A stretch of 64,000 nucleotides of DNA from IMGVR_UViG_3300032293_002041:164973-228972; one strand, 5' to 3'. Counted from the stretch's first letter, positions 22,067 through 64,000 are shown. Notes: generated from the letters alone by a model not told the origin. Program-made: numbers and translations.

Positions 22067-22126
22067 TTTATGTATTGATTGTTAAAGTATAGGTTTTTGA
22101 GGAACTCGACGAGTTGTTTCATTGGG

Positions 22127-23146: not shown

Positions 23147-23308
23147 AATGGTTATTTAAATAAAGGTTGTAATTAGTAGGTTTATGATAATATACACTAT
23201 ATTGTTACTACTCCTATGAGATGCTCAGTGTGGCGGTGCCGCGGTCGCTTGGTGTATACAAGGGTAGGGTGCCGATTGTGTCGCAGATTAGGAATTCGAT
23301 TAAGTGTT

Positions 23309-46554: not shown

Positions 46555-46555
46555 A

Positions 46556-47641: not shown

Positions 47642-47732
47642 TTGAGCAATTATTCTTGCCTGAGATATGAAATTGATTACTATATTATAGCAATAATCTT
47701 TATTCTGTCAAAAGAGTTAATGGTTGACTAGC

Positions 47733-51726: not shown

Positions 51727-51733
51727 CAAAAAT

Positions 51734-52249: not shown

Positions 52250-52266
52250 CTTTTAAGTGATTAATT

Positions 52267-53148: not shown

Positions 53149-53152
53149 TAAT

Positions 53153-53773: not shown

Positions 53774-53784
53774 GGTCTTGTATT

Positions 53785-54633
53785 ATGAAAATAGCATTCT
53801 TTGGAGCTTCAATAACTCAGCAAAAAACTGGCTATGTTAGCTTTTTTAAGAATCTGAATCAGAATTATTTTGTTAGTCAATTCGGATATGGAGGTATGAA
53901 TATTAGTGATGCGGGGGTTTGTTATATAGATGGGGTAATTCGGTCAAATCCTAATTATTGTTTTTTAGATTGGTTTAGTCCAGAATGCTATAGACCTCCA
54001 AAAAAGATCGATATATACGTTGATGTTTTAGTGGAAAAATTATTAACTATTGATTGTTATCCTATTTTCTTGTTCTTCTATAGGAAAGATATGGATCGTG
54101 GGTGGTTTGATATGTTTGAGCATTTAAAAAGCTATGGGCAAAAATATTCTATAAATAGTATTGATTTATCAAAACTGGAAAATGCTTCTGATTATCTGAG
54201 AGATTCTATTCATACTAATGATCTTGGATCAGAAAAGTATGGGTCAATTATTAGTGAAACATTTCATAATATGACTTTTCAAAAAAACTTTATTATTCCA
54301 GAGAAAAATAGATTGAGCAGAATAACCTCTATCAATTTGGGAATTGTGGCTAAAGAGTATGTTAAGCTTAAAAGTTCTGGATTTTCTAGTATTGTGGGAA
54401 TTTTACAAAAAGTGGGGCCTTATAGTGGTGGGGTCATTTGTATTAGTGGAGGTAAAGAGAGTATGGTGGATTTGAAAGATAAGTGGTCAGAAAGATATGA
54501 ACGGAAAACTATTAAGTTTAATATTGATACATTTTGTGGCGAGTTGGTTGTGAAGGTGTCAGAATCTAATAAGTTGGTGTGGGAAGAGCTATTTTATACG
54601 GGCGATCCTATTGAGTTGGTGGAATATGTATGA
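53785..54633 (+). CDS. SGNH/GDSL hydrolase-family protein
   Basis: IAFFGASIT block I; DSIHTN block V. Confidence 0.75.
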   Translation: MKIAFFGASITQQKTGYVSFFKNLNQNYFVSQFGYGGMNISDAGVCYIDGVIRSNPNYCFLDWFSPECYRPPKKIDIYVDVLVEKLLTIDCYPIFLFFYRKDMDRGWFDMFEHLKSYGQKYSINSIDLSKLENASDYLRDSIHTNDLGSEKYGSIISETFHNMTFQKNFIIPEKNRLSRITSINLGIVAKEYVKLKSSGFSSIVGILQKVGPYSGGVICISGGKESMVDLKDKWSERYERKTIKFNIDTFCGELVVKVSESNKLVWEELFYTGDPIELVEYV

Positions 54634-55333
54634 AAACATGATTTTTATATGTGGGTGTGGTCATTCTGGTACTACCATTTTAAATAAGATAATGAGTAAT
54701 CATAGAAATATTTATGGATTAGATTATGAGACTGGAATTTTTGTAAAATATAAGGGTGAAAAGCTAAATAGTGAAATTGATAAGTTAGATAAACAAAGAA
54801 AGTTATGCAAGAAAAGGTGGGTGTGTGAGAAGACTCCGGGACATGTTTATCATATAGATAATATATTTCAATTGGTAAGGTCTCCGAAAGTTATTGTGCT
54901 GGTGAGAGATGGACGAGATGTTGTGTGTAGTTTGCATAAAAGATATAGCAATTTTGAGTTTAGCATTAACAGATGGATAAAAGATAATCAGGAGTGGTTA
55001 AATAGTGAACATGGGGGCGAGTTACATGTGCTAAAATATGAAGACTTCGTGAAAAGACCTGGGGCTGAGCTTAGAAAGATATGTTCTTATCTAGAAGAAG
55101 ACTATGATGATGAAATGTTAAACTATCCTAAAGAAGAATTAGTATTACCAGAAGATATCTTTGACAAAGAAATTAGCGGAGAATATCATAGACTATTGAG
55201 ATTATATCAAATCAATCAGAATCTATATGATGGAAGCAAAAGATATTTGAAAGATCTTAATAAGGAGCAGATGAATCAGTTGTTTCTGAATGAATCTTTC
55301 GTGACTCTGATGACAAAATTAGGATACCTCTGA
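54626..55333 (+). CDS. Sulfotransferase (Sulfotransfer_3-like)
   Basis: FICGCGHSGTT, EKTP, VRDGRDV..S, KYEDFV..P..ELRKICSYL. Confidence 0.85.
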   Translation: MYENMIFICGCGHSGTTILNKIMSNHRNIYGLDYETGIFVKYKGEKLNSEIDKLDKQRKLCKKRWVCEKTPGHVYHIDNIFQLVRSPKVIVLVRDGRDVVCSLHKRYSNFEFSINRWIKDNQEWLNSEHGGELHVLKYEDFVKRPGAELRKICSYLEEDYDDEMLNYPKEELVLPEDIFDKEISGEYHRLLRLYQINQNLYDGSKRYLKDLNKEQMNQLFLNESFVTLMTKLGYL

Positions 55334-55827: not shown

Positions 55828-55909
55828 CCTAACCCTATGGTACGTAGGCACTTAGGGGCTATATGATGGGCAAAATTTGACGTAAGTGCTTATGCTGTAT
55901 GGATTTATG
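55828..55909. repeat. 82-bp cassette element E1 (eroded core)
   Basis: CCTAACCCTATG-GTACG-TAGGCACTTAGG / ggctatatgatgggcaaaatttga / CGTAAGTGCTTA-TGCTG-TATGGATTTATG. Confidence 0.8.
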
Positions 55910-55972
55910 ACTAATTTGAAGAATTTTTGTGTTTGGCATGAAATTATATTTGAAAAAATCCAAAGATTTCTC

Positions 55973-56000
55973 TTGAAAGTGTCGATAAATACTGTATAAT
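55973..56000 (+). promoter_or_regulatory. sigma70-type promoter with GTCGATA box
   Basis: TTGAAA-N16-TATAAT. Confidence 0.7.
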
Positions 56001-56040
56001 GAAAGCACAAGAGAACAAGAGACAAAAAGAGGACAAGAAA

Positions 56041-56274
56041 ATGGAAAACCTGATCGTTCTGAACACTGTGGCTGAGTTGATTGAGTTCCTTGACAACACC
56101 AGCCTTGATACCTTGGTTGGACGGGTTGCTTTTGCTTCCGATCTTCTCGATCATGTTCGTGCGAGCGGATACAACCAGATTGCAATCGACGACGAACTGG
56201 GCTTTATGGACGATGGTGGTTGGATCGAGATTGACGAGATGGGTTATGTTGTGGATGATTTTGCGGTCAACTGA
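56041..56274 (+). CDS. Small acidic protein (paralog of 56657..56896)
   Basis: ATG after purine-rich leader; MENLIVLNTVAEL...DTLVG. Confidence 0.75.
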   Translation: MENLIVLNTVAELIEFLDNTSLDTLVGRVAFASDLLDHVRASGYNQIAIDDELGFMDDGGWIEIDEMGYVVDDFAVN

Positions 56275-56288
56275 TTATCTGTACAGTA

Positions 56289-56317
56289 TTGACAACGCCC
56301 ACCAAACACAGTAGGAT
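56289..56317 (+). promoter_or_regulatory. sigma70-type promoter for a leaderless gene
   Basis: TTGACA-N17-TAGGAT, ATG 6 nt later. Confidence 0.6.
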
Positions 56318-56323
56318 ACAGAC

Positions 56324-56473
56324 ATGACAATTCAAGTTCAAAACACGATTCGCCGCTTAGTTGCTCGACATGGATATTCTGCTACGTTTGTACAGCACAT
56401 GGGCGAGGGTATCTGTCTGTACAGTATCGGTGGCATCATGTATCGCATTCGTGGTGACGGTACGATTCTGTAA
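56324..56473 (+). CDS. 49-aa hypothetical protein (MTIQVQNTIRRLVARHG...)
   Basis: Manually translated; fits exactly between promoter and E2. Confidence 0.65.
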   Translation: MTIQVQNTIRRLVARHGYSATFVQHMGEGICLYSIGGIMYRIRGDGTIL

Positions 56474-56475
56474 GA

Positions 56476-56557
56476 CGTAAAGCCTTACGACGTAAGGAGT
56501 TATGGTTTGCCGGGCGGGCCGAATTCGACGTAACTACTTATGAAACATAGACTTACG
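56476..56557. repeat. 82-bp cassette element E2
   Basis: CGTAAAGCCTTA-CGACG-TAAGGAGTTATG / gtttgccgggcgggccgaattcga / CGTAACTACTTA-TGAAA-CATAGACTTACG. Confidence 0.95.
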
Positions 56558-56590
56558 ACAACCTTACGAAATTGTAAGGAAACTTTTCGC

Positions 56591-56618
56591 TTGCAAGCTA
56601 AAGAATCTTCTGTATAAT
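56591..56618 (+). promoter_or_regulatory. sigma70-type promoter, GTCGATA box just downstream of -10
   Basis: TTGCAA-N16-TATAAT-GTCGATA. Confidence 0.7.
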
Positions 56619-56656
56619 GTCGATATAAGAGTAAGAGACAACAAGAGGACAAGAAA

Positions 56657-56896
56657 ATGATCACCATCAACAACCGCGACGAACTGAACAACCTCCTCTA
56701 CGGAGAGGGTTCCACCATGCCCGACACTCTTGTTGGGATTGCTCGCATCGGTGGTGAGTTGCTGTCTGAGGCTCTGACTCACGATCTGAGGGATGGTACC
56801 TTCCACATCGGAGATTTCTTTCCCTGTGGTGATGAGGGTGAGGGGATCACCGTTGACCGGGACGGAAACATTCTGGAAGATTTTCTTTACTACTAA
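56657..56896 (+). CDS. Small acidic protein (paralog of 56041..56274)
   Basis: MITINNRDELNNLL...DTLVG...ITVDRDGNILEDF. Confidence 0.75.
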   Translation: MITINNRDELNNLLYGEGSTMPDTLVGIARIGGELLSEALTHDLRDGTFHIGDFFPCGDEGEGITVDRDGNILEDFLYY

Positions 56897-56900
56897 GGTA

Positions 56901-56930
56901 TTGACAACGGAATAGCCGATACTGTATAAT
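56901..56930 (+). promoter_or_regulatory. sigma70-type promoter
   Basis: TTGACA-N18-TATAAT with GCCGATA in the spacer. Confidence 0.7.
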
Positions 56931-56962
56931 AGAACCAACACAAGAGAAAAGGAAAAAGAAAC

Positions 56963-57112
56963 ATGGAAAACGTCGTTACCGTCTACTTCACTTCTGACTG
57001 CTGCAATTGCGAAATGACCTTTGCTCAGGCCGATTACGGTATCTGCCCTAGCTGTGGAGAACACTGCGAGGTTATCGGGGAGGAAGTATCCGAAGATAAT
57101 GGGGAGTATTGA
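56963..57112 (+). CDS. 49-aa Zn-ribbon-like protein
   Basis: Manually translated; SDCCNC...CPSCGEHC. Confidence 0.7.
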   Translation: MENVVTVYFTSDCCNCEMTFAQADYGICPSCGEHCEVIGEEVSEDNGEY

Positions 57113-57119
57113 GGCTTGA

Positions 57120-57201
57120 CGTAAAGCCTTATGTGGTAAAGACTTACGACTTGCCGGGCGGGCCGAATTCGACGTAAGTACTTGACAGATAACGACTTAC
57201 G
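57120..57201. repeat. 82-bp cassette element E3
   Basis: CGTAAAGCCTTA-TGTGG-TAAAGACTTACG / acttgccgggcgggccgaattcga / CGTAAGTACTTG-ACAGA-TAACGACTTACG. Confidence 0.95.
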
Positions 57202-57205
57202 ACAA

Positions 57206-57222
57206 TTGGCACGGTATTTGCT
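57206..57222 (+). promoter_or_regulatory. sigma54 (-24/-12) consensus site
   Basis: TTGGCACG-GTAT-TTGCT. Confidence 0.5.
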
Positions 57223-57269
57223 ATGAGAAACCTTACGAAAATGTAAGGAAAGTTTTCTACTGTAGGGTA

Positions 57270-57298
57270 TTGACGTTGGACGATAATGTATGTATAAT
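57270..57298 (+). promoter_or_regulatory. sigma70-type promoter with GACGATAAT box
   Basis: TTGACG-N17-TATAAT. Confidence 0.8.
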
Positions 57299-57335
57299 GA
57301 TGACACAAGAGAACGGTAACGCAAAGGAAAAGAAA

Positions 57336-57554
57336 ATGAGCAATGTATCTTTCGACATGGTGATGGCTGGCGTTCGACAGGTGTTCGGCAAGGAATCGTA
57401 TCGTGTTCGCGTCGTCCACTCTGGTGCGTATACGCGAGTCGAGTCAAAAGAGATGCTTCACTCTGTCACGATCAAGTCGAATGATACGATCATGGAAAAG
57501 CTGAATGAGCTGTTCTATGATGTGGTGTGTGAAGATTGTGCGTCGGGCATCTAG
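57336..57554 (+). CDS. 72-aa hypothetical protein (MSNVSFDMVMAG...)
   Basis: ATG after purine leader. Confidence 0.7.
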   Translation: MSNVSFDMVMAGVRQVFGKESYRVRVVHSGAYTRVESKEMLHSVTIKSNDTIMEKLNELFYDVVCEDCASGI

Positions 57555-57556
57555 GC

Positions 57557-57586
57557 TTGACAAGACAGTAGCGTATACGGTATAAT
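57557..57586 (+). promoter_or_regulatory. sigma70-type promoter
   Basis: TTGACA-N18-TATAAT. Confidence 0.7.
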
Positions 57587-57614
57587 ACCACCAACACAAG
57601 AAAGAGAGTTGAGT

Positions 57615-57773
57615 ATGTTTGAAATCGGAGAAAATGTTCGTTGCGGTGGTGTTGTGGGTCAGATTGTTGGCGTTCGATATGATCGACACGATCATGTCGC
57701 AACATGGACGATTGCTGTGAATCACAGTGACGAAGTCATTACTGCGGAAACTAACGAAATAGAAACCCTCTAA
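57615..57773 (+). CDS. 52-aa SH3/KOW-like beta-barrel protein
   Basis: Manually translated; MFEIGENVRCGGVVGQIVGV. Confidence 0.7.
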   Translation: MFEIGENVRCGGVVGQIVGVRYDRHDHVATWTIAVNHSDEVITAETNEIETL

Positions 57774-57792
57774 GCAAGAGAAAGAGAAAAAG

Positions 57793-58008
57793 ATGCTTCA
57801 GACCAACTGCAAAACTGTGACGAACAACCTTGACAAGATTTTCGCTGCTATGCGAGCTGGCAAGTATCACTGTGTGATCGACCCAAGGGGTAATGCTCAT
57901 GTGGGCCTTATCAACAGCATCATGCGTGAAGATGGTAGCGGAAAGAATTGGATCGTGACGGTGACCAGCCGTACAGTAAGTGAAAAGGTGTTCATTCACG
58001 CTTCGTGA
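57793..58008 (+). CDS. 71-aa hypothetical protein
   Basis: Purine leader; TGA directly abuts E4. Confidence 0.75.
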   Translation: MLQTNCKTVTNNLDKIFAAMRAGKYHCVIDPRGNAHVGLINSIMREDGSGKNWIVTVTSRTVSEKVFIHAS

Positions 58009-58090
58009 CGTAAACCCCTACCCTATAAGCACTTAGGGCTAGGCGGGCGGGCCGATTTTGACGTAAGTGTTTGCCATATAACGACTTACG
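58009..58090. repeat. 82-bp cassette element E4
   Basis: CGTAAACCCCTA-CCCTA-TAAGCACTTAGG / gctaggcgggcgggccgattttga / CGTAAGTGTTTG-CCATA-TAACGACTTACG. Confidence 0.95.
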
Positions 58091-58134
58091 GCAACCTTGC
58101 AGTATTGTAAGAAAACTTTTTCTGCTGTAGGCTA

Positions 58135-58163
58135 TTGACATTTGACGATAATAGATGTATAAT
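58135..58163 (+). promoter_or_regulatory. sigma70-type promoter with GACGATAAT box
   Basis: TTGACA-N17-TATAAT. Confidence 0.85.
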
Positions 58164-58185
58164 GATAGCACAAGAAAGAGGTGAG

Positions 58186-58350
58186 ATGATGGATTTCGAA
58201 ATTGGCAATAAGGTGATGGTAGGTGGGATTCAGGACAAGGGTACGATCATCGGATGGTTCTTCGATGAGGGGAATATGTGGGTTGTGCAGTTCCCCAACG
58301 GTCTGACCATCGACTGTTTTGAGCAAGAGCTGACCAAGATTGGCTCTTGA
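58186..58350 (+). CDS. 54-aa SH3/KOW-like protein
   Basis: MMDFEIGNKVMVGG...FDEGNMWVV; TGA lies inside the next TTGACA. Confidence 0.75.
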   Translation: MMDFEIGNKVMVGGIQDKGTIIGWFFDEGNMWVVQFPNGLTIDCFEQELTKIGS

Positions 58351-58375
58351 CAAGTACCTAACCCCTAGCTACAAT
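58347..58375 (+). promoter_or_regulatory. sigma70-type promoter
   Basis: TTGACA-N17-TACAAT. Confidence 0.75.
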
Positions 58376-58400
58376 TCAATCACAAGAAAGAGAGAAACTA

Positions 58401-58514
58401 ATGATTACGGTTATCGAATACGTTCAGCTGTTTGCCTTGATTGCTTTTGCTGGTTTCATTTCGTATACTGTTCACGAAGTGGCTAATGCTATCGATTCCA
58501 TTCTTCACGACTGA
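58401..58514 (+). CDS. 37-aa single-pass membrane peptide
   Basis: Manually translated; LFALIAFAGFISY. Confidence 0.6.
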   Translation: MITVIEYVQLFALIAFAGFISYTVHEVANAIDSILHD

Positions 58515-58557
58515 GGGAACTATGTCTCTGAAACATTGCTCATCGCAGGGGAACGTT

Positions 58558-58716
58558 ATGATTGCCAAAACTCTATCTGGTACTGACGTTACCATAAACG
58601 ACAGCGATATCGTTATTGTGGACGGTAAGCCCGTTATCGTGTTTTTCGTTGTTGACAGCAACGGACAGCATGGTATATTCAATCAGAACCAGTTGACCGA
58701 TTACAAAGAGGTTTGA
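58558..58716 (+). CDS. 52-aa hypothetical protein (alternative start 58522)
   Basis: MIAKTLSGTDVTIND...; start uncertain. Confidence 0.5.
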   Translation: MIAKTLSGTDVTINDSDIVIVDGKPVIVFFVVDSNGQHGIFNQNQLTDYKEV

Positions 58717-58718
58717 GT

Positions 58719-59018
58719 ATGACACACAGTGAAGCAGTGAAGATGGTTCGTGGTAAGACCAATAAGGATACTCGCAAGGTTGGCAACAACACCTATGCCT
58801 ACATCCAGGCCGATGGTAGCGTTGCAATAGAGTTGCATGGTACGAATGTCGTGGTGATTTATCCCGACGATACTGTTATGCTCAATAGTGGTGGATGGCA
58901 TACGCACACCACTAAGAAGCGTATCAATCAGTATTCACCCGTACAGGTATGCCAGAAGAACTATGAATGGTACCTGAAAGATGGCACACCATTTGAGGAT
59001 CGTATGGTAGTGAGTTGA
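58719..59018 (+). CDS. 99-aa phage hypothetical protein
   Basis: VAIELHGT.VV...LNSGGW.T.TTK.RIN; TGA abuts E5. Confidence 0.75.
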   Translation: MTHSEAVKMVRGKTNKDTRKVGNNTYAYIQADGSVAIELHGTNVVVIYPDDTVMLNSGGWHTHTTKKRINQYSPVQVCQKNYEWYLKDGTPFEDRMVVS

Positions 59019-59100
59019 TATAAAGCCTTGACCGTAAAGAACTTACGGCGAGGCGGGCGGGCCGGGATCGACGTAAGTGCTTACCCCATAAGGACTTACA
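59019..59100. repeat. 82-bp cassette element E5
   Basis: TATAAAGCCTTG-ACCGT-AAAGAACTTACG / gcgaggcgggcgggccgggatcga / CGTAAGTGCTTA-CCCCA-TAAGGACTTACA. Confidence 0.95.
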
Positions 59101-59143
59101 GTAACCTTACAGCATTGTAAGAAAACTTTTCTATCGTAAAGCA

Positions 59144-59172
59144 TTGACAATGGACGATAATATGTGTAGAAT
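59144..59172 (+). promoter_or_regulatory. sigma70-type promoter with GACGATAAT box
   Basis: TTGACA-N17-TAGAAT. Confidence 0.85.
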
Positions 59173-59197
59173 CATAGGACAAGAAAGAGAGTTTCAA

Positions 59198-59398
59198 ATG
59201 GAAAAGTCGGTTTCGGTTCAAGGTTTTACTCGTTCGCTCCCCACCATCTATCTGTACGACCATGTGGTCCGTCTGAAAAGTGGTGCATCCTACAGGGTGT
59301 CTCGATGCCATTCGCATCGTGAAGTGTACCAATACATGCGTTCACTAGGCTACGATCCTAAGGATATTGTGAGCGTCACTTCGGTGACCCCTAAGTAG
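59198..59398 (+). CDS. 66-aa basic protein (paralog of 60671..60871)
   Basis: MEKSVSVQGFTRSLP... Confidence 0.75.
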   Translation: MEKSVSVQGFTRSLPTIYLYDHVVRLKSGASYRVSRCHSHREVYQYMRSLGYDPKDIVSVTSVTPK

Positions 59399-59404
59399 AG
59401 GGGC

Positions 59405-59432
59405 TTGACGCGGGGGAAAAGTTTGGTAGAAT
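59405..59432 (+). promoter_or_regulatory. sigma70-type promoter
   Basis: TTGACG-N16-TAGAAT. Confidence 0.7.
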
Positions 59433-59455
59433 ACAAAAAAGAGAAAGAGAGAAAA

Positions 59456-59638
59456 ATGAATCCCAACTACTTCCAGCCCACCTTTGAGCAGATGAACACC
59501 AGTACCATTCGGCTTTGGCTGTATGAAGCACAGGTTAGACTGCCCGAATCTACCGGAGCGGTGAGAGATATCCTGTGTGAGGGAATCAAGGGTGCTGCAA
59601 CTGAGCTTCTGTACAGATACAGGCAAGCAAAGGGTTGA
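59456..59638 (+). CDS. 60-aa helical hypothetical protein
   Basis: MNPNYFQPTFEQ...; TGA abuts E6. Confidence 0.7.
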   Translation: MNPNYFQPTFEQMNTSTIRLWLYEAQVRLPESTGAVRDILCEGIKGAATELLYRYRQAKG

Positions 59639-59720
59639 CGCAAAGCCTTACGGCGTAAGCACTTACGTCGAGCCGGGCGGGCCGCTTTTGACGCAAGTCG
59701 TTATGCTGCAACACTTTACG
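59639..59720. repeat. 82-bp cassette element E6
   Basis: CGCAAAGCCTTA-CGGCG-TAAGCACTTACG / tcgagccgggcgggccgcttttga / CGCAAGTCGTTA-TGCTG-CAACACTTTACG. Confidence 0.95.
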
Positions 59721-59727
59721 CTCATCT

Positions 59728-59744
59728 AGCAAATACTGTGCCAA
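59728..59744 (-). promoter_or_regulatory. sigma54 (-24/-12) consensus site, reverse orientation
   Basis: Minus strand TTGGCACA-GTAT-TTGCT. Confidence 0.45.
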
Positions 59745-59807
59745 ACCCAAACAAAATGACGCAAAGTTTTGTCAAAATCTCTTGACAATAAAATCTCTAG
59801 ATTTCTC

Positions 59808-59836
59808 TTGCAAACTCAAGATTGCTCTGGTATAAT
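59808..59836 (+). promoter_or_regulatory. sigma70-type promoter, GACGATA box just downstream of -10
   Basis: TTGCAA-N17-TATAAT-GACGATA. Confidence 0.75.
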
Positions 59837-59876
59837 GACGATATAAGAGATAGAGAAGAAAGAAAGAGAGAAAAGA

Positions 59877-60023
59877 ATGTACGAGATTGGTGATAAGGTT
59901 GTGGTGAATGGATCGGTTGGAAAGATTGTTTCCTATCACTATGATGAGGGAAACGTGTGGACGGTTAGGATGCTCGGTGGGCAGCACTGGGATTTTTGCG
60001 AAAGCGAAATGTCTCCCGCTTGA
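59877..60023 (+). CDS. 48-aa SH3/KOW-like protein
   Basis: Manually translated; MYEIGDKVVVNG...YDEGNVWTV; TGA inside the next TTGACA. Confidence 0.75.
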   Translation: MYEIGDKVVVNGSVGKIVSYHYDEGNVWTVRMLGGQHWDFCESEMSPA

Positions 60024-60048
60024 CAGGAGTTGAGAAAATCGCTACAAT
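60020..60048 (+). promoter_or_regulatory. sigma70-type promoter
   Basis: TTGACA-N17-TACAAT. Confidence 0.75.
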
Positions 60049-60073
60049 GCACTCACAAGAAAGAGAGAAAGAA

Positions 60074-60454
60074 ATGAAAGAAAAGTTCCCTATCATCGAA
60101 AATGCCAAGCGTCAAGCCCGTATGATCTTCAAGGGTATCGCTGTGCCGATGCTTGTGGAAATCCCTGACGATAAGGTTGTGGACGATGTCGATTACGTTT
60201 ACGGTGTGACTGACCACAAGCGTTACGTTGTGAGCGAAAAGGTTCTCAAGTTCAATCGTACCGCACTGAAGAACATTGGCAAGGTTCGCAAGGAAAAGGC
60301 TGACCCCCGATATGTGGGGGGTGAAGATACCATGATCGTTCCGGTTGGCAAGCCGGGAAGTCGTGAGCGTGTTGAAGAACTGACCAGACAGTACGCTGCC
60401 ATTGCTGCTTGTGGTGAAGAAATCAGCCCGTTCAGCTTCAAGGGCGATGAATGA
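60074..60454 (+). CDS. 126-aa hypothetical protein
   Basis: MKEKFPIIENAKRQ...; purine leader. Confidence 0.75.
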   Translation: MKEKFPIIENAKRQARMIFKGIAVPMLVEIPDDKVVDDVDYVYGVTDHKRYVVSEKVLKFNRTALKNIGKVRKEKADPRYVGGEDTMIVPVGKPGSRERVEELTRQYAAIAACGEEISPFSFKGDE

Positions 60455-60487
60455 ACTATCACTACTGCACAAAAGCATAGCAGTTGA

Positions 60488-60569
60488 CGTAAAGCGTTAC
60501 CCTATAAAGACTTAGGGCAAACGCGGCCCGCCTCGCGAAGCGTAAGTGCTTGTGGGGTAATGACTTACG
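60488..60569. repeat. 82-bp cassette element E7 (core inverted)
   Basis: CGTAAAGCGTTA-CCCTA-TAAAGACTTAGG / gcaaacgcggcccgcctcgcgaag / CGTAAGTGCTTG-TGGGG-TAATGACTTACG. Confidence 0.95.
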
Positions 60570-60613
60570 ATAACCTTACGATATTGCAAGGAAAGTTTTT
60601 CTGGCCTAAGCTA

Positions 60614-60642
60614 TTGACAAATGACGATAATACTGGTATAAT
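60614..60642 (+). promoter_or_regulatory. sigma70-type promoter with GACGATAAT box
   Basis: TTGACA-N17-TATAAT. Confidence 0.85.
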
Positions 60643-60670
60643 GATAGAAGAAAGAAAGAGAGAGTTGAAG

Positions 60671-60871
60671 ATGGAAAAGTCAGTTTCAGTCAAGAGTTTC
60701 ACCCGTTCGCTGCCTCCGATCTATACCCACGATTTCATCGTGCGTATGAAAGACGGGAAAGCCTATAAGCTTTCTCGTTGTGGCTCGAATCGTCAAGCCT
60801 ACGAAATCATGCGTTCAAATGGTTTCGATACCAAGGAAATCGTGAGGGTTGACGCCGCCCCTAAGAAGTAG
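60671..60871 (+). CDS. 66-aa basic protein (paralog of 59198..59398)
   Basis: MEKSVSVKSFTRSLP... Confidence 0.75.
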   Translation: MEKSVSVKSFTRSLPPIYTHDFIVRMKDGKAYKLSRCGSNRQAYEIMRSNGFDTKEIVRVDAAPKK

Positions 60872-60943
60872 GGGTTGAGTGTCGTCTCTCCTAATCCTTC
60901 GGATTTGCGGCTGTTGGGTATAGTCAGCCTAAAGACTGGCCTA

Positions 60944-60972
60944 TTGACAAGCCGATAACTATAGTATAGAAT
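60944..60972 (+). promoter_or_regulatory. sigma70-type promoter with GCCGATA box
   Basis: TTGACA-N17-TAGAAT. Confidence 0.75.
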
Positions 60973-60990
60973 GGTGCAAAAAGGGGAGAC

Positions 60991-61182
60991 ATGGTAGGTG
61001 ATTTTATTCTGGTGTGGGCTTGGCTGGGGCTTATGCTTTTTGTTTTGGGGTGTGTCTACTTTCTCTCTATTGTGGGGGAAGTTTGGCAGAGAATAAATGA
61101 GTATGAGGCTATGAGGGCCAGGGGTTTTACTCTTATGAAAGATGATAAGGGTGATGATTTCTGGGTGGGATACGGGGATTGA
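60991..61182 (+). CDS. 63-aa single-pass membrane protein
   Basis: ILVWAWLGLMLFVLGCVYFLSIVG; GGAG RBS. Confidence 0.7.
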   Translation: MVGDFILVWAWLGLMLFVLGCVYFLSIVGEVWQRINEYEAMRARGFTLMKDDKGDDFWVGYGD

Positions 61183-61206
61183 CCGAATAACAATGGAGAT
61201 ACAAGG

Positions 61207-61317
61207 ATGTATCAATTTGATTTTGTTAGTGTCGCTTTCGGCTATATTTGTGGTATCGTACTGTATGCTAGTATGTCAAATATCATGTATATGGAGGAAA
61301 ATGATGAAAGTGAGTGA
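61207..61317 (+). CDS. 36-aa membrane peptide (MYQFDFVSVAFGYICGIVLY...)
   Basis: Manually translated; GGAG upstream. Confidence 0.5.
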   Translation: MYQFDFVSVAFGYICGIVLYASMSNIMYMEENDESE

Positions 61318-61381
61318 CTACATATTGTGGGGGGTGTGTTTTATAATCGGCTGCACCATGACGTATCTCCTTCACCAGTAA
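61301..61381 (+). CDS. 26-aa membrane peptide running into E8 (MMKVSDYILWGVCFIIG...)
   Basis: GGAGG RBS; stop lies inside the left site of E8. Confidence 0.45.
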   Translation: MMKVSDYILWGVCFIIGCTMTYLLHQ

Positions 61382-61443
61382 GGATTTACGACCAGTCCGG
61401 CCCGCCCCGCGAAGCGTAAGTGCTTATGTTGCAACACTTTACG
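61362..61443. repeat. 82-bp cassette element E8 (core inverted)
   Basis: CGTATCTCCTTC-ACCAG-TAAGGATTTACG / accagtccggcccgccccgcgaag / CGTAAGTGCTTA-TGTTG-CAACACTTTACG. Confidence 0.9.
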
Positions 61444-61486
61444 ACAAACTTACAGCATTGTAAGGAAACTTTACTGCTGAAGGGTA

Positions 61487-61515
61487 TTGACAGTTGACGA
61501 TAATAGGTATAGAAT
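61487..61515 (+). promoter_or_regulatory. sigma70-type promoter with GACGATAAT box
   Basis: TTGACA-N17-TAGAAT. Confidence 0.85.
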
Positions 61516-61542
61516 GGTAGGACAAGAAAGAAAGGGAGTCAA

Positions 61543-61740
61543 ATGCTAGAAGTTGGGAATAAGGTTTCGGTGCTGCTGCCATACTGGGTTCAAGTCCATG
61601 ATCGCGTTGAGCCATATGTTAACGCTACGGTTGTGAAGGTTTCCGAAAACACCGTCACAGTAGAATATGATGCTCCAGATACATGGAGTGGTAAGGCATG
61701 TCTGGTTGTTAATGATCTAGGCCGGATTTCCAAGATTTGA
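61543..61740 (+). CDS. 65-aa SH3/KOW-like protein
   Basis: MLEVGNKVSV...ATVVKVSENTVTVEYD; TGA inside the next TTGACA. Confidence 0.7.
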   Translation: MLEVGNKVSVLLPYWVQVHDRVEPYVNATVVKVSENTVTVEYDAPDTWSGKACLVVNDLGRISKI

Positions 61741-61764
61741 CAACAGGGAAAAGTTTGGTAGAAT
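61737..61764 (+). promoter_or_regulatory. sigma70-type promoter
   Basis: TTGACA-N16-TAGAAT; shares GGGAAAAGTTTGGTAGAATAC with the promoter at 59405. Confidence 0.75.
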
Positions 61765-61789
61765 ACCAACACAAGAAAGAGAGAGCAGA

Positions 61790-61969
61790 ATGACGAATAC
61801 TTTCTACTGTTTGCAATGTGATGCTGATTGTGGGCCTTTTAAGCATTGTTGTGCTTGCGAGGACAATCCTGAGATGCAGAATGTTCAACATCCCGGCTTC
61901 ACCTCTAGTGCGGAAATTCAGCAGGAAATCGACGCAGAAGATTTCTGGTACGAGTATGATCAGCGTTGA
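61790..61969 (+). CDS. 59-aa Cys-rich acidic protein
   Basis: Manually translated; CLQC...C...HCCAC; TGA inside the next TTGACA. Confidence 0.7.
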   Translation: MTNTFYCLQCDADCGPFKHCCACEDNPEMQNVQHPGFTSSAEIQQEIDAEDFWYEYDQR

Positions 61970-61994
61970 CAGAGTTGATTAGGCTTGGTAGAAT
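61966..61994 (+). promoter_or_regulatory. sigma70-type promoter
   Basis: TTGACA-N17-TAGAAT. Confidence 0.75.
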
Positions 61995-62037
61995 AAGCCC
62001 ATACTCTATAATAGAAGAACAAGAAAGAGAGAACAGA

Positions 62038-62259
62038 ATGAAGAACGAACTCAATGATGGAGAACTGGTTCAGTGTGACAATAAGTGGTTTGGCCGGGTG
62101 TGTGATTTTGCTCGCACCGAAGATGGCGAGATTGTTGCATACTACGTGGTTCCTCTTGACGACAGAGAGAACACATGGGTTGACAGCGATAACATTGTTT
62201 CCTATGCTGCTCTTCGTGCAGCTTTTGGCCCGATTGACTATATCGAAAAGTCTCTCTAA
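62038..62259 (+). CDS. 73-aa SH3/Tudor-like protein
   Basis: LNDGELVQC...GRV...YYVV...TWVDSDNI. Confidence 0.65.
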   Translation: MKNELNDGELVQCDNKWFGRVCDFARTEDGEIVAYYVVPLDDRENTWVDSDNIVSYAALRAAFGPIDYIEKSL

Positions 62260-62269
62260 AAATCCTTGA

Positions 62270-62351
62270 CATAAACCCTTGCTGCGTAAACACTTACGAC
62301 GAGCGGGGCGGGCCGCGTTCGCTGTAACTCTTTATTTACCAACACTTTACG
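62270..62351. repeat. 82-bp cassette element E9
   Basis: CATAAACCCTTG-CTGCG-TAAACACTTACG / acgagcggggcgggccgcgttcgc / TGTAACTCTTTA-TTTAC-CAACACTTTACG. Confidence 0.95.
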
Positions 62352-62413
62352 GTAACTGCAAAATTTTTCATCTTTGGCACGAAATTATATTTTGGAATTT
62401 TCCAAGTTTCTGC

Positions 62414-62442
62414 TTGACGCTGGTCGATAATAAGTGTAGAAT
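62414..62442 (+). promoter_or_regulatory. sigma70-type promoter with GTCGATAAT box
   Basis: TTGACG-N17-TAGAAT. Confidence 0.8.
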
Positions 62443-62479
62443 GACAGCATCACGAACGGAAACCACAAGGAACAGAATC

Positions 62480-62653
62480 ATGCTGAACTTCGACGAGATC
62501 AACGACATTCTGAACGACATGGCCGAAGCGGGTATTGTTGAGCCGATGGTCGAGCCGATTGACGATCCCAGCGTGGAAGTCAATTTTTGGGATTGGGCAG
62601 ACATTGTTGGTGCTGTTGAAGATTTTGTCCCAGAGGAGTATGATCATGCTTAG
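62480..62653 (+). CDS. 57-aa acidic protein with no Lys or Arg
   Basis: MLNFDEINDILNDMAEAG... Confidence 0.7.
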   Translation: MLNFDEINDILNDMAEAGIVEPMVEPIDDPSVEVNFWDWADIVGAVEDFVPEEYDHA

Positions 62654-62720
62654 TACGATTGCTTTTGTTGTTGCATACGTTGGCCTGTTTTACATCACCA
62701 CCATCATGAGGGATTGGTAA
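62646..62720 (+). CDS. 24-aa membrane peptide (MLSTIAFVVAYVGLFYITTIMRDW)
   Basis: Bridges neighbours with overlapping start and stop. Confidence 0.45.
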   Translation: MLSTIAFVVAYVGLFYITTIMRDW

Positions 62721-62980
62721 TGAGTTACGAGTATGACGATTTCGAGGATTTTTTCAGTGCGGATTCTGACCCTAATGGAGACGGCGATTACGATCCGTCG
62801 TATGACGATGATTCGTTTGATGATAGTATGGATGGTGATGCTGAATCTGCGTTGGCTTCCGCTGGATGGGGAACAGATGAGGATTACGGCTGTTATGGGG
62901 ACGATGGAGTAGAGGATTTCCACTCTGATGAGGCTGTAGGGTTTGTTGATTATAATGAAGATGGCCCATACGACGACTGA
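62720..62980 (+). CDS. 86-aa hyper-acidic protein; DNA-mimic candidate
   Basis: About 32 Asp/Glu, no Lys/Arg; DGDAESALASAGWGTDEDYG. Confidence 0.7.
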   Translation: MSYEYDDFEDFFSADSDPNGDGDYDPSYDDDSFDDSMDGDAESALASAGWGTDEDYGCYGDDGVEDFHSDEAVGFVDYNEDGPYDD

Positions 62981-62989
62981 GCCATTCGC

Positions 62990-63071
62990 CCTAAACCCTT
63001 TGTGCGAAAGCACTTAGGGTCAGCGGGGCGGGCCGCTTTTGACGTAAGTCCTTGAAGCTAATAGACTTAGG
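62990..63071. repeat. 82-bp cassette element E10
   Basis: CCTAAACCCTTT-GTGCG-AAAGCACTTAGG / gtcagcggggcgggccgcttttga / CGTAAGTCCTTG-AAGCT-AATAGACTTAGG. Confidence 0.95.
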
Positions 63072-63099
63072 ATAAAAAAGAATTTTTTAAGATACCCTC

Positions 63100-63128
63100 T
63101 TGCATTGGTCGATAATATATGGTAGACT
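63100..63128 (+). promoter_or_regulatory. sigma70-type promoter with GTCGATAAT box
   Basis: TTGCAT-N17-TAGACT. Confidence 0.65.
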
Positions 63129-63170
63129 AGTGTGTAATCACTAACCAAACCCCCAGTAGGAAACTGTAAG

Positions 63171-63620
63171 ATGATCAACGTCAACCTCTCGCTCTCTCTC
63201 ACCTCTGCTCTCTCTCTGCTCCGCAACACCAGCATCTCCGACACTATTCGTGACGAAATCCAGAGAGCCATTGAAATCGGCTTGTCTCAGTGCGATAGCG
63301 ATGTCAAGCCTACTCGTCATATGAATCTGACTCTGAAAAGCGTCCCTGTCAAAGAGAAGATTCACTGCATTGCTGCCGTGAGAAACACTCTGCTGTGGGG
63401 TCTGAAAGACAGCAAGGATTTCGTTGACGTTGTGTTGGGTAAACTCGACCTTGAAAGCCCCGGCATCGAATCATATGACAGTGCTGGCTATTGGTCTCCC
63501 GTCTATAAGGGTGGAACCCCTAACACTCTGACTGAGCGTACCGAACTGGTCAAAGAGCTGGCAAAGCAGCTTAGTGAGATTGGGTGCGAGGTTTACACGG
63601 ACACTTACAACTGCACCTAA
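63171..63620 (+). CDS. Protein with ribosomal bL12 (L7/L12) C-terminal-like domain
   Basis: KIHCIAAVRNTLLWGLKDSKDFVD resembles K.AVIKAVR..TGLGLKEAKDLVE; P.TL...VKELAKQLSEIGCEV resembles P..LK...AE.LKK.LEEAGAEV. Confidence 0.7.
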   Translation: MINVNLSLSLTSALSLLRNTSISDTIRDEIQRAIEIGLSQCDSDVKPTRHMNLTLKSVPVKEKIHCIAAVRNTLLWGLKDSKDFVDVVLGKLDLESPGIESYDSAGYWSPVYKGGTPNTLTERTELVKELAKQLSEIGCEVYTDTYNCT

Positions 63621-63702
63621 TTTAAACCCTTATGGCGTAAACACTTACGTCAAACGGGGCGGGCCGGATTTGCTGTAACTCCTTATGCTATAACACTTTA
63701 TA
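63621..63702. repeat. 82-bp cassette element E11
   Basis: TTTAAACCCTTA-TGGCG-TAAACACTTACG / tcaaacggggcgggccggatttgc / TGTAACTCCTTA-TGCTA-TAACACTTTATA. Confidence 0.95.
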
Positions 63703-63735
63703 TCAACCTTACGGTATTGCAAGAAAAATTTTCAT

Positions 63736-63763
63736 TTGACAGCTAAAGTTTCTATGCTATACT
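63736..63763 (+). promoter_or_regulatory. sigma70-type promoter, GTCGATAAT box just downstream of -10
   Basis: TTGACA-N16-TATACT-T-GTCGATAAT. Confidence 0.7.
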
Positions 63764-63793
63764 TGTCGATAATAGAGTAGAGGGAGAAACAGA

Positions 63794-63958
63794 ATGACGA
63801 CCGTGATGGTTTTCGATATCTGGACAGATGAGTTGCTGGACAGTGTGTCTGCTGCAACTTCATCCGAAGCGTGGAGTGAGGCGTGGGACAAGTGGGGTTG
63901 GCCCGATTGTATGGGTGCTGATGTTAGGTTTAAAGAGGTGAATGATGAGTCGGTATGA
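63794..63958 (+). CDS. 54-aa Trp-rich acidic protein
   Basis: Manually translated; MTTVMVFDIWTDELLD... Confidence 0.65.
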   Translation: MTTVMVFDIWTDELLDSVSAATSSEAWSEAWDKWGWPDCMGADVRFKEVNDESV

Positions 63959-64000
63959 TGACTGGAATGAGGACGATGATTCGGACGATGGCTATGATGC
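63942..64000 (+). CDS. Start of another acidic protein (MMSRYDDWNEDDDSDDGYD...), truncated by window edge
   Basis: Open reading overlapping the previous stop. Confidence 0.4.
   Translation, partial: MMSRYDDWNEDDDSDDGYD

What the first reader, a model, noticed from the sequence alone, without database searches (positions are those of the whole stretch)
55828..63702. Array of 11 exactly 82-bp double-palindrome elements dividing tiny phage genes into promoter-bearing cassettes
Seen: 11 copies at 55828, 56476, 57120, 58009, 59019, 59639, 60488, 61362, 62270, 62990 and 63621. All have the same geometry: a 29-bp site (12-5-12, consensus CGTAA(A/G)NNCTTA-N5-TAA(G/C)NACTTACG), a 24-bp core with GGGCCG at core positions 12-17, and a second 29-bp site. 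The whole element is an imperfect inverted repeat. Lengths are invariant while arm centres and 5-bp spacers vary, as expected for protein-binding sites under geometric constraint. Elements separate units of 1-4 small genes. Known analogies: arm-spacer-arm palindromes (CTT-N7-AAG) recall tyrosine-recombinase core sites and dif/pdif modules; four boxes following a stop codon recall integron attC; T4-type PeSL elements shuffle early genes. None matches this architecture exactly. Inference: a site-specific or repeat-mediated cassette system that rearranges and expands host-takeover genes. Alternative: four tandem GTAAG-NN-CTTAC operators for a repressor or nucleoid protein. No recombinase is in this window.
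Basis: partly seen in the sequence, partly recalled or inferred. Interest (0 to 1): 0.92.

Follow-up and report, generated by a model that had tools for sequence, protein, structure and literature searches.

The report
Phage early-gene boundary repeat array
A fixed-length 82-bp double palindrome, followed by a strong promoter, separates small early genes in an uncultivated 229-kb freshwater phage and its relatives; it looks like a protein-binding boundary element, and it is also where gene cassettes are gained and lost.

Summary
The 11 copies sit at the stated coordinates: 10 canonical and 1 degenerate. The contig is circular in assembly, and the array continues across its junction to 25 copies over about 22 kb. 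A profile finds 411 copies in 77 loci of related viral contigs, and 404 have no indel. Four 11-bp arms and a central GGC-NN-GCC box are conserved, while the two 7-bp spacers vary freely. No hairpin model shows more pairing than column shuffles, so the element is most likely read as double-stranded DNA by a protein.

It abuts the upstream stop codon and supplies stops in all three frames. An AT-rich tract and a sigma-70-type early promoter usually follow. The array is a GC-elevated island of ORFan genes.

Related phages differ by whole cassettes, with a single chimeric element at the junction. However, crossover positions are graded, spacers differ between copies, core orientation is stably inherited, and no recombinase was found. 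This argues against site-specific recombination.

The closest known kind is the T4-type PeSL promoter/stem-loop cassette. I file the element as a new variant of that kind; the binding protein and the host are unknown. The same 11-7-11 palindrome is over-represented in Planctomycetota genomes, which is a host lead.

The parts
55828..64000 (+). Window part of the early-gene array. It is a GC-elevated island (about 45% GC against about 33% upstream) of about 25 small + strand ORFan genes, 11 elements and about 22 sigma-70-type promoters. It continues over the circular contig junction.
55828..55909 (+). Element 1. Degenerate copy at the array's left edge: arms recognisable, no GC box.
   Evidence: nhmmer score 28 in L029
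56476..56557 (+). Element 2, canonical, core forward.
57120..57201 (+). Element 3, canonical, core forward.
58009..58090 (+). Element 4, canonical. The upstream ORF 57793-58008 ends in the TGA that abuts the element.
59019..59100 (+). Element 5, canonical. The upstream ORF 58719-59018 (Kyano_Gp96 family) ends in the abutting TGA.
59639..59720 (+). Element 6, canonical. The promoter lies 87 bp downstream.
60488..60569 (+). Element 7. The central GC 10-mer is inverted while the arms keep standard orientation.
61362..61443 (+). Element 8. The central GC 10-mer is inverted. Arm 1 is altered (CGTATCTCCTT) because the upstream ORF reads 20 nt into the element. All 15 orthologues share this state.
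62270..62351 (+). Element 9, canonical.
62990..63071 (+). Element 10, canonical (CCTAA...TTAGG arm variant).
63621..63702 (+). Element 11, canonical. It is the last copy in the window, not the last in the genome.
58135..58163 (+). Example of an element-associated early promoter (TTGACA-17-TATAAT, 12 of 12 matches). Similar ones lie at 55973, 56591, 57270, 59144, 59808, 60614, 61487, 62414 and 63736.
   Evidence: family D3/D6
56562..56579 (+). Fifth small palindrome, CCTTAC-N6-GTAAGG, followed by AAACTTTT, between element and promoter. It is present in most window copies but is not part of the wider family consensus, which is an AT-rich tract there.
58719..59018 (+). Cassette gene of the Kyano_Gp96 family, with homologues in records of T7-like phages and T4-like cyanophages (near the left end of the ~40-kb records). 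It is the only cassette protein in the window's array with a Pfam match above the curated cut-off.

Best explanation
The 82-bp element is the boundary piece of a repeated intergenic module. The module consists of stop codons in all three frames, the 82-bp double palindrome, an AT-rich tract, a sigma-70-type early promoter and a purine-rich ribosome-binding site. This module divides a 22-kb, GC-elevated region of small ORFan early genes in a circularly assembled 229-kb uncultivated phage genome. The same module occurs in about 65 related viral contigs.

Shown:
- The element has a fixed length.
- Four 11-bp arms are conserved as sequence, arranged as two 11-7-11 sites whose starts are 53 bp apart (about five helical turns), around a centred GGC-NN-GCC box.
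- The two 7-bp spacers vary freely.
- No base-pairing model beats its shuffle control.
- The element abuts or contains the upstream stop codon.
- It is inherited with the upstream gene.
- Related genomes differ by whole cassettes, with a chimeric element at the junction.

Inferred:
- The element is read as double-stranded DNA by a sequence-specific protein, perhaps two dimers or a tetramer, of phage or host origin.
- That protein closes each transcription unit (as a roadblock or insulator) and/or co-ordinately controls the neighbouring early promoters.
- Because the module is repeated, it also provides the homology for ordinary, not site-specific, recombination that shuffles the cassettes, as PeSL elements do in T4-type phages.
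For: - Copies and statistics.
- Family-wide conservation: 411 copies in 77 loci, 404 without indel.
- Conservation profile, with arms conserved and spacers free.
- No covariation. Observed against shuffled pairing is 72.8 vs 72.7% for two 29-nt hairpins, 72.2 vs 72.9% for a whole-element hairpin, and 67.8 vs 66.9% for four small hairpins.
- Individual RNA folds are inconsistent between copies. No Rfam family matches.
- Intrinsic-terminator-like sites are not enriched: 8 found against 5.9 expected.
- 39 promoter-like sites were found against 15 expected, about 22 of them strong and on the + strand. 181 of 266 elements have a strong promoter within about 110 nt downstream.
- Upstream ORFs end at the element's own stop codons in 135 of 209 cases.
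- Element orientation follows transcription in 230 of 249 cases.
- Cassette indels have a chimeric element at the junction. Break-points cluster at module edges.
- Linkage to the upstream gene decays gradually through the element.
- The array coincides with a GC island.
- Cassette proteins are ORFans.
- PeSL features come from PMC2839356 and PMC4122927.
Against: - No binding protein has been identified. No clear DNA-binding domain was found among the commonest cassette families.
- Promoter-to-element distances are not fixed. The -35 offset falls in several classes (18, 28-29, 33, 39-40, 43-44, 62 and 87), so a strict activator-type geometry is unlikely.
- Many promoters inside cassettes work without an element.
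- Lack of covariation is weak evidence where columns hardly vary. An RNA or single-strand role with sequence-specific recognition is not excluded.
- The roadblock/insulator function is inference only; there are no transcript data.
Confidence: 0.5

Rival explanations
1. The element works at the RNA level. The palindromes act in the sense transcript as 3'-end hairpins for termination, processing or mRNA stabilisation, recognised sequence-specifically by a host factor, much as PeSL stem-loops terminate transcription.
For: - The element lies directly after the stop codon of each unit.
- Canonical intrinsic terminators are not enriched among about 22 tandem strong promoters.
- PeSL stem-loops are effective terminators (PMC2839356).
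- The same 11-7-11 palindrome lies 3-4 nt after tRNA genes in bacterial genomes, with no integrase nearby. It also forms the hairpin of a conserved non-coding locus in Pirellulales-type MAGs.
Against: - No model pairs better than shuffles.
- The conserved A.C and C.A mismatches at 6-24 and 7-23, and the C.C mismatch at 62-74, weaken the sense-strand hairpins.
- Minimum-energy folds differ from copy to copy, with z-scores from -3.3 to +0.5.
- The strict 82-bp length, fixed 7-nt 'loops' and fixed 24-nt linker are more typical of double-stranded DNA geometry.
- No U-tract follows the hairpins.
Confidence: 0.2
2. The element belongs to a dedicated site-specific cassette system, integron-like or pdif-like. 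A tyrosine-type recombinase, from the phage or the host Xer system, binds the 11-7-11 sites and excises or inserts gene-plus-element cassettes.
For: - The 11-7-11 inverted-arm geometry matches recombinase core sites.
- The gene-followed-by-site layout, with the site inherited with its upstream gene, resembles ORF-attC.
- Cassette indels leave one chimeric element.
- Positions 2 and 28 covary (CG...CG against CC...GG).
Against: - No recombinase was found in the window, in about 700 kb of array loci, or in 29 kb beyond the junction.
- There are 142 and 170 distinct spacers among 266 copies, and the left and right spacers of one element are unrelated, so partner sites lack a common overlap region.
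- Linkage decays as a gradient from the core to the promoter, with no single crossover point.
- Break-points are as frequent at promoters and gene starts as in the element.
- Core orientation is fixed among orthologues.
- Cassettes carry their own promoters.
Confidence: 0.12
3. The element is a selfish, MITE-like or REP/REPIN-like repeat that spread by transposition and has no function for the phage.
For: - The whole element is an imperfect inverted repeat with terminal arms.
- Similar paired palindromes occur as intergenic repeats in bacterial chromosomes, for example two units in L122.
Against: - Copies occur only in the early array, always between a stop codon and a promoter, and 92% lie in one orientation relative to transcription.
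- No element-only presence/absence polymorphism turned up in the seven pairs of related loci compared; the two indels resolved in detail each comprise one cassette plus one element.
- No target-site duplication is visible, and no transposase or RAYT gene was seen.
- Arms are under strong purifying selection across hundreds of diverged copies.
Confidence: 0.05
4. The array is a cis-acting DNA-handling region, such as a centromere-like or iteron array, a replication origin, or DNA-entry pause sites, bound by a partition, initiator or virion protein.
For: - There are many regularly spaced protein-type sites confined to one genome region.
- All strong promoters point one way, as in regions that enter the cell first.
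Against: - The sites are tied one-to-one to gene ends and promoters, and they move with individual genes.
- No ParB-type or initiator-type gene was seen nearby.
- The region is hypervariable in content between relatives, which is unusual for an origin or centromere.
Confidence: 0.05

Closest known systems
PeSL (promoter-early stem-loop) regulatory cassettes of T4-type phages (PMC2839356, PMC4122927)
   Same: Both are composite intergenic repeats containing a palindromic or GC-containing piece, an AT-rich tract and a sigma-70-type early promoter. Both are concentrated in a hyperplastic region of small ORFans. In both, relatives differ by cassettes, with one chimeric repeat left at the junction. 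In both, exchange appears to be by homology rather than by a dedicated recombinase.
   Different: The phage lineage is unrelated. The palindromic piece here is a strictly 82-bp, sequence-conserved double 11-7-11 palindrome with a centred GC box, not a simple G-tract/C-tract hairpin. Pairing is not supported by covariation, and terminator activity is untested. The region is a contiguous 22-kb GC island. Mini-circles have not been looked for.
Integron attC sites and gene cassettes
   Same: In both, an ORF is followed immediately by an imperfect palindromic site that travels with it, and arrays consist of small accessory genes.
   Different: attC sites conserve structure rather than sequence or length, act as folded single strands, and need an adjacent IntI integrase. 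Integron cassettes are mostly promoterless. Here the sequence and length are conserved, there is no covariation, no integrase was found, and each cassette has its own promoters.
Tyrosine-recombinase core sites (dif, loxP, FRT) and pdif modules of Acinetobacter plasmids (own knowledge)
   Same: Both have two inverted arms of about 11 bp around a 6-8-bp central region, and both flank small gene modules.
   Different: Partner sites normally share the central region, whereas here the spacers nearly all differ. No Xer-type or integrase-type gene was seen, and the crossover is not confined to the spacer.
REP/BIME elements and REPINs of bacteria (own knowledge)
   Same: Both are imperfect palindromes placed after stop codons in intergenic DNA, sometimes as inverted pairs around a central motif, and are bound by host DNA proteins. 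Similar palindromes occur in Planctomycetota chromosomes.
   Different: REPs are dispersed genome-wide and are linked to RAYT transposases. The phage element is confined to one array, has one orientation, and is tied to promoters.
Stoperators of cluster A mycobacteriophages; intergenic promoter repeats of halovirus HF2 (PMC8707807); baculovirus hr palindromes (own knowledge, except HF2)
   Same: All are many copies of a protein-binding or promoter-bearing repeat in short intergenic gaps of a viral genome, used for genome-wide transcription control.
   Different: The sequences, sizes (13 bp, 29/58 bp and about 30 bp) and hosts all differ. None has the 29-24-29 architecture or the link to cassette turnover.

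Membership tests
PeSL-type promoter/stem-loop cassette | Sigma-70-type early promoter with an AT-rich tract upstream | tested here: met
   About 22 strong + strand promoters in 8.6 kb. 181 of 266 elements have a strong promoter within about 110 nt. The family consensus has an AT-rich tract right after the element.
PeSL-type promoter/stem-loop cassette | Adjacent stem-loop that terminates upstream transcription | tested here: inconclusive
   A palindromic element is present, but pairing does not exceed shuffles, no U-tract follows, and folds are inconsistent. Terminator activity cannot be tested here.
PeSL-type promoter/stem-loop cassette | Flanks ORFans in a hyperplastic region, and indels between relatives leave one chimeric repeat | tested here: met
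   Cassette proteins are ORFans. L044 against L050 and L073 against L023 show chimeric single elements. Break-points cluster at module edges.
PeSL-type promoter/stem-loop cassette | Occurs in T4-type myoviruses, with sequence homology to PeSL motifs | tested here: not met
   There is no DNA match to any cultured phage. The terminase is only about 24% identical to those of Bacillus siphophages.
PeSL-type promoter/stem-loop cassette | Mini-circles formed by exchange between neighbouring repeats | not testable with these tools
   This needs reads or inverse PCR on the source sample.
Integron (attC cassette array) | Integron integrase gene and attI next to the array | tested here: not met
   No integrase was found in the window or in the flanks of 77 arrays. 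The rest of the genome was not seen.
Integron (attC cassette array) | Sites conserved in structure, variable in sequence and length | tested here: not met
   404 of 411 copies have identical length. The arms are conserved as sequence and show no covariation.
Integron (attC cassette array) | Promoterless cassettes expressed from one common promoter | tested here: not met
   Nearly every gene has its own strong promoter.
Tyrosine-recombinase core site / pdif module | Inverted arms of about 11 bp around a central region of 6-8 bp | tested here: met
   The 11-7-11 conservation profile, with positions 1-11 and 19-29 conserved and 12-18 free.
Tyrosine-recombinase core site / pdif module | Central region shared by the sites that recombine | tested here: not met
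   142 left and 170 right distinct 7-mers among 266 copies. Left and right spacers are unrelated, with mean identity of 1.98 of 7 against 1.88 in shuffles.
Tyrosine-recombinase core site / pdif module | Cognate recombinase present, with crossover confined to the central region | tested here: inconclusive
   No recombinase was seen in the sequence available. Linkage decays gradually from the core to the promoter. Binding by host Xer cannot be tested.
MITE / REP-REPIN | Dispersed copies in either orientation, target-site duplication, associated transposase (RAYT or IS) | tested here: not met
   Copies occur only in the array. 92% lie in one orientation. No duplication is seen at the ends, and no transposase was found.
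CRISPR array | Short repeats of 23-47 bp at regular spacing, separated by non-coding spacers | tested here: not met
   The repeat is 82 bp long, start-to-start spacing is about 470-2100 bp, and the intervals are expressed genes with promoters.
Any Rfam RNA family | Match at the gathering score | tested here: not met
   No family matched anywhere in the window.

The most novel reading that the evidence does not exclude
The element may be the cis-site of a dedicated protein machine not yet described in phages. One possibility is a cassette-capture system that uses 11-7-11 sites without needing shared spacers. The other is a boundary or termination system borrowed from the host. In that case the same fixed-geometry palindrome, which is strongly over-represented in Planctomycetota genomes and sits right after their tRNA genes, would be read by a conserved host factor that the phage exploits to close its early transcription units.
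Probability: 0.15. Interest if true: 0.85.

Novelty: new variant of a known kind. Interest (0 to 1): 0.6.

Why it matters
Early 'host-takeover' regions are where phages keep their fastest-evolving anti-host genes, and little is known about how those regions are organised outside T4-type phages. This array shows that an unrelated, uncultivated jumbo-phage clade has the same plug-and-play logic: each gene, or small group of genes, carries its own promoter, and each unit ends in a boundary element.

Its boundary element is much more elaborate than the PeSL stem-loop. It has a strictly fixed geometry and supplies stop codons in every frame. It therefore offers several things:
- a clean cis-element for finding a new DNA-binding regulator or roadblock protein;
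- a marker for locating early regions and cassette turnover in metagenomic phage genomes;
- a possible host clue pointing to Planctomycetota, for which very few phages are known.

The coincidence of the array with a GC-rich island is also worth explaining. It could reflect recombination-driven GC bias, or early genes matching host composition.

Tried and rejected
- Conserved RNA structure: individual folds, mutual information, pair tables and three explicit models with shuffle controls gave no support. Rfam has no match.
- Active inversion of the core between the two sites: rejected, because orthologous elements in 15 contigs keep the same orientation.
- Left and right spacers identical or complementary, as recombination within an element would require: they are not.
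- Helical phasing between element and promoter: the offsets fall in discrete classes, with spectral peaks near 10 and 12 bp, but the copies are not independent, so I draw no conclusion.
- Cultured relatives: no DNA match in the phage collection in near or distant mode.
- Candidate binding protein among the commonest cassette families: Pfam and PHROGs gave no clear DNA-binding domain. HNH homing endonucleases with HTH domains occur in only a few arrays.
- tRNA-adjacent palindromes in bacteria as integrase att sites: their neighbours are housekeeping genes, with no integrase.
- Conserved Planctomycetes loci as known RNAs: no Rfam family.
- Walking the whole source genome to look for a recombinase: blocked on one side by a 7733-residue gene, which is too long for the look-up. 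On the other side each step adds only about 10 kb. I stopped after 29 kb.
- Host assignment from MAG bins: array-bearing contigs are binned with many unrelated taxa, so this is unreliable.

Full report
**1. The observation**

The repeat finder recovers the family at the stated coordinates.

The signal is far beyond chance:
- GGCGGGCCG occurs 10 times in 64 kb, only in the array, against 0 expected.
- CGTAAGNNCTTACG with up to 2 mismatches gives 18 hits against 1.2 expected, all inside the elements.

Three corrections apply:
- Copy 55828 is a degenerate edge copy without the GC box.
- In 60488 and 61362 the central 10-mer GGGCGGGCCG lies on the other strand, while the arms keep their orientation.
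- The array does not end at 63702.

**2. Context**

Window positions 1-55.8 kb have about 33% GC. They encode phage structural genes on the minus strand:
- terminase, 38369-40402
- portal, 36103-38313
- tail fibres
- a 4061-residue protein
- an ERCC4 nuclease
- an HNH endonuclease
- a putative sigma factor, 42893-43558

A plus-strand block of glycosyl- and sulfotransferases follows at 44-55.3 kb. At 55.8 kb the GC content jumps to about 45% and the array starts.

The window is the last 64 kb of IMG/VR contig 3300032293_002041, which is 228,972 bp long. Look-ups of array proteins show that the contig's start overlaps its end by 123 bp. Fourteen more elements follow there, giving 25 elements over about 22.5 kb. 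GC drops to 34-39% right after the last one. Beyond that lie tightly packed small genes without elements.

**3. Distribution**

A pattern built from the core and arm 3 found 78 stretches in about 65 viral contigs, many of them 150-244 kb long. A profile of the window copies finds 411 elements in 77 of these stretches, and 404 have no indel. Median spacing is about 1.1 kb. Across the family, arrays average 42.7% GC against 35.6% in their flanks. No cultured phage has anything similar at the DNA level. The terminase is only about 24% identical to those of Bacillus phages.

**4. Anatomy from 266 distinct copies**

The consensus is:

acTtGa | CGTAAacCCTTg...c.tAAGGACTTAgG | gCgAGgggGGCgGGCCgcgtTtGa | CGTAAGTcCTTAtg...cAAcgACTTACG | aCAA.tttaaaatttt

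- Positions 1-11, 19-29, 54-64 and 72-82 are conserved, as are GGC (38-40) and GCC (43-45).
- The spacers at 12-18 and 65-71 are free: 142 and 170 different 7-mers, and the two spacers of one element are unrelated.
- TTGA precedes both arm 1 and arm 3, so the element is also two direct half-elements of about 33 bp whose starts are 53 bp apart.
- The central 10-mer is forward in 129 copies, inverted in 37 and another GC-rich string in 100. Where the 8-mer is present it is almost always centred (160 of 166).
- Relative to transcription, the element has one orientation in 230 of 249 cases.

**5. DNA site or folded strand?**

Mutual information is dominated by neighbouring columns and by the core flip. 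There are no long-range Watson-Crick pairs.

For each hairpin model, the observed complementarity equals what the column compositions give:

| Model | Observed pairing | Shuffled pairing |
|---|---|---|
| Two 29-nt hairpins | 72.8% | 72.7% |
| Whole-element hairpin | 72.2% | 72.9% |
| Four small hairpins | 67.8% | 66.9% |

Conserved A.C, C.A and C.C mismatches sit inside the putative stems. Single-copy folds disagree with each other. Rfam has no match. Together with the invariant length, this points to recognition as double-stranded DNA by a protein. An RNA role with sequence-specific recognition is weakened but not excluded.

**6. Relation to genes and promoters**

- The region holds about 22 strong plus-strand sigma-70-type promoters, so nearly every small gene has one. 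Terminator-like hairpins are not enriched (8 against 5.9 expected).
- 181 of 266 elements have a strong promoter within about 110 nt downstream. The -35 offset falls in classes (18, 28-29, 33, 39-40, 43-44, 62 and 87), and the intervening tract is AT-rich.
- Upstream ORFs end at stop codons built into the element in 135 of 209 cases: TGA at -3..-1, TAA at 3-5, TAA at 18-20 and TAG at 26-28. These cover all three frames, so any gene placed upstream is closed by the element.
- Cassette proteins are ORFans. They include acidic proteins, small SH3-like paralogues and one Kyano_Gp96-family protein, whose homologues occur in T7-like phages and T4-like cyanophages.

**7. Cassette turnover**

Arrays of related contigs are mosaics. 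Two clean cases show one element in one phage where a relative has two elements plus a cassette; the single copy is a chimera whose crossover lies in the core or right half:
- L044:4841 against L050:10347 and 10821
- L073:1476 against L023:5168 and 5803

Across all related pairs, homology end-points pile up at the element's 5' edge, at its 3' part and just beyond, and at gene starts.

Linkage runs with the upstream gene. The figures below are for pairs that share only the upstream gene:

| Segment | Identity in such pairs | Random pairs |
|---|---|---|
| Left spacer | 0.85 | 0.33 |
| Core, left / right | 0.80 / 0.74 | 0.48 / 0.47 |
| Right spacer | 0.58 | 0.36 |
| 18 nt downstream | 0.55 | 0.36 |

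The element therefore travels with its upstream gene, and exchange points are spread from the core to the promoter. That is the signature of recombination on repeated homology, not of a fixed cleavage site. Fifteen orthologues of element 61362 all carry the inverted core, so core orientation is an inherited state rather than a switch.

**8. Recombinase search**

None was found in any of the sequence I could read:
- the window
- about 700 kb of array loci, where only HNH homing endonucleases appear, in about 5 loci
- 29 kb past the contig junction

The remaining part of the source genome, roughly 125-135 kb, could not be read with the tools.

**9. A side lead**

Thirteen loci are phage-type arrays binned into assorted freshwater MAGs, one of them a Planctomycetaceae MAG (L159).

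Of the other 107 single sites:
- 54 are in Planctomycetota.
- 10 have a second similar palindrome within 8 kb, against 0.6 expected.
- The spacer is 7 bp in all but one of the 82 matches found when spacer lengths of 2-13 bp were allowed; that one is 9 bp.
- At least 6 sit 3-4 nt after tRNA genes, with no integrase nearby.

One Planctomycetia chromosome carries a repeated palindrome-core-palindrome unit. In addition, 8 Planctomycetota MAGs, mostly Pirellulales/Planctomycetales types, share a conserved non-coding locus built around this hairpin. This may point to the host, to a host factor that reads the motif, or to nothing more than a common hairpin. It was not resolved.

**10. Comparison and verdict**

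The closest known system is the PeSL cassette of T4-type phages. PeSL combines a stem-loop, an AT-rich tract and a sigma-70 early promoter. It flanks ORFans in hyperplastic regions, and exchange between copies deletes or inserts cassettes, leaving a chimeric PeSL (PMC2839356; PMC4122927). The present array works like that but is not a member of the family. The phage lineage is unrelated. The palindromic piece is a strictly 82-bp double 11-7-11 site with a centred GC box, conserved as sequence. Its terminator function is untested.

Integron, pdif/dif, REP/MITE and CRISPR memberships each fail on at least one defining feature that I tested.

I rate it a new variant of a known kind, and moderately to highly interesting. 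The cis-element is unusually well defined and widespread, it marks a GC-distinct hypervariable early region, and its reader protein is unknown.

Noticed in passing
window 55828-64000 joined to L203:1-14200: The source contig is circular in assembly: its start overlaps its end by 123 bp. The array spans the junction, so the window shows only 11 of 25 elements. The GC-rich island (43-49% GC) coincides exactly with the array.
   Followed up: yes
L079-L198 (bacterial genome loci), e.g. L122:4216-4842, L147:3481-3509, L186:1082-1110: The same 11-7-11 palindrome is strongly over-represented in Planctomycetota genomes (54 of 107 single-site hits). It often follows tRNA genes directly, sometimes occurs as paired units, and the spacer is 7 bp in all but one match. 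This may be a host clue or a shared protein-binding motif.
   Followed up: partly
L086, L104, L119, L126, L151, L155, L171, L187: A conserved non-coding locus of about 150 nt in Pirellulales-type MAGs is built around this hairpin (CCTCTTCGT...CTCGAAATT[hairpin]AAGTTCGAG...ACGAAGAGG). It lies after a terminator and matches no Rfam family. It may be an undescribed small RNA or leader.
   Followed up: partly
L080, L141, L156, L161, L172 (one Lachnospiraceae genome): A repeated unit, AATGC-CGTAA..CCTT-N7-AAGGACTTACG-GCATTTT...ATGAAAAATGTCTGTT, occurs on five contigs of one isolate. It looks like a REP-like or terminator-like repeat family.
   Followed up: no
window 6711-18896 (-) and L199:16743 onwards: Two giant virion genes lie in or next to the window: a 4061-residue protein with a He_PIG Ig domain, and just outside the window a 7733-residue protein with a PhageMin_Tail (tape-measure-like) domain.
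   Followed up: no
window 820-1758 (-) and 30443-32152 (-): Two proteins begin with an Mtd_N (major tropism determinant) domain, as in targets of diversity-generating retroelements. No reverse transcriptase was looked for.
   Followed up: no
window 22001-24000: There is a local GC spike to 52% in an otherwise 33-38% GC structural region. It covers the fn3 + Laminin_G_3 protein gene at 22127-23146.
   Followed up: no
window 44073-55333 (+): An 11-kb block of glycosyltransferase and sulfotransferase genes (RgpF, GT8, Sulfotransfer_1/2/3) sits between the sigma/terminase module and the array. In many relatives the array lies next to the sigma/terminase-side genes, so this block looks like an insertion.
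   Followed up: partly
window 40371-41106 (-) and 42893-43558 (-): An ERCC4-type nuclease and an HNH endonuclease sit beside the large terminase, with a weak sigma-70-like factor a little further on. These genes are conserved next to arrays in 14-21 related loci.
   Followed up: partly
L003:4976-6127, L067:4311-4889, L046:11113-11547, L204:5604-6215: HNH homing-endonuclease genes with N-terminal HTH domains are inserted in the arrays of some relatives. They are a second source of mosaicism.
   Followed up: partly
L207:10950-20210: Beyond the array, about 40 small plus-strand genes are packed end to end, with overlapping stops and starts, no elements, and about 35% GC. This is a second and differently organised small-gene region.
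   Followed up: no
window 57615-57773, 58186-58350, 59877-60023, 61543-61740, 62038-62259; 59198-59398 and 60671-60871: Several cassettes encode paralogous small proteins. One set starts M(F/Y)EIG(D/E/N)xV and looks SH3/KOW-like. The other starts MEKSVSV. This shows duplication within the array.
   Followed up: no
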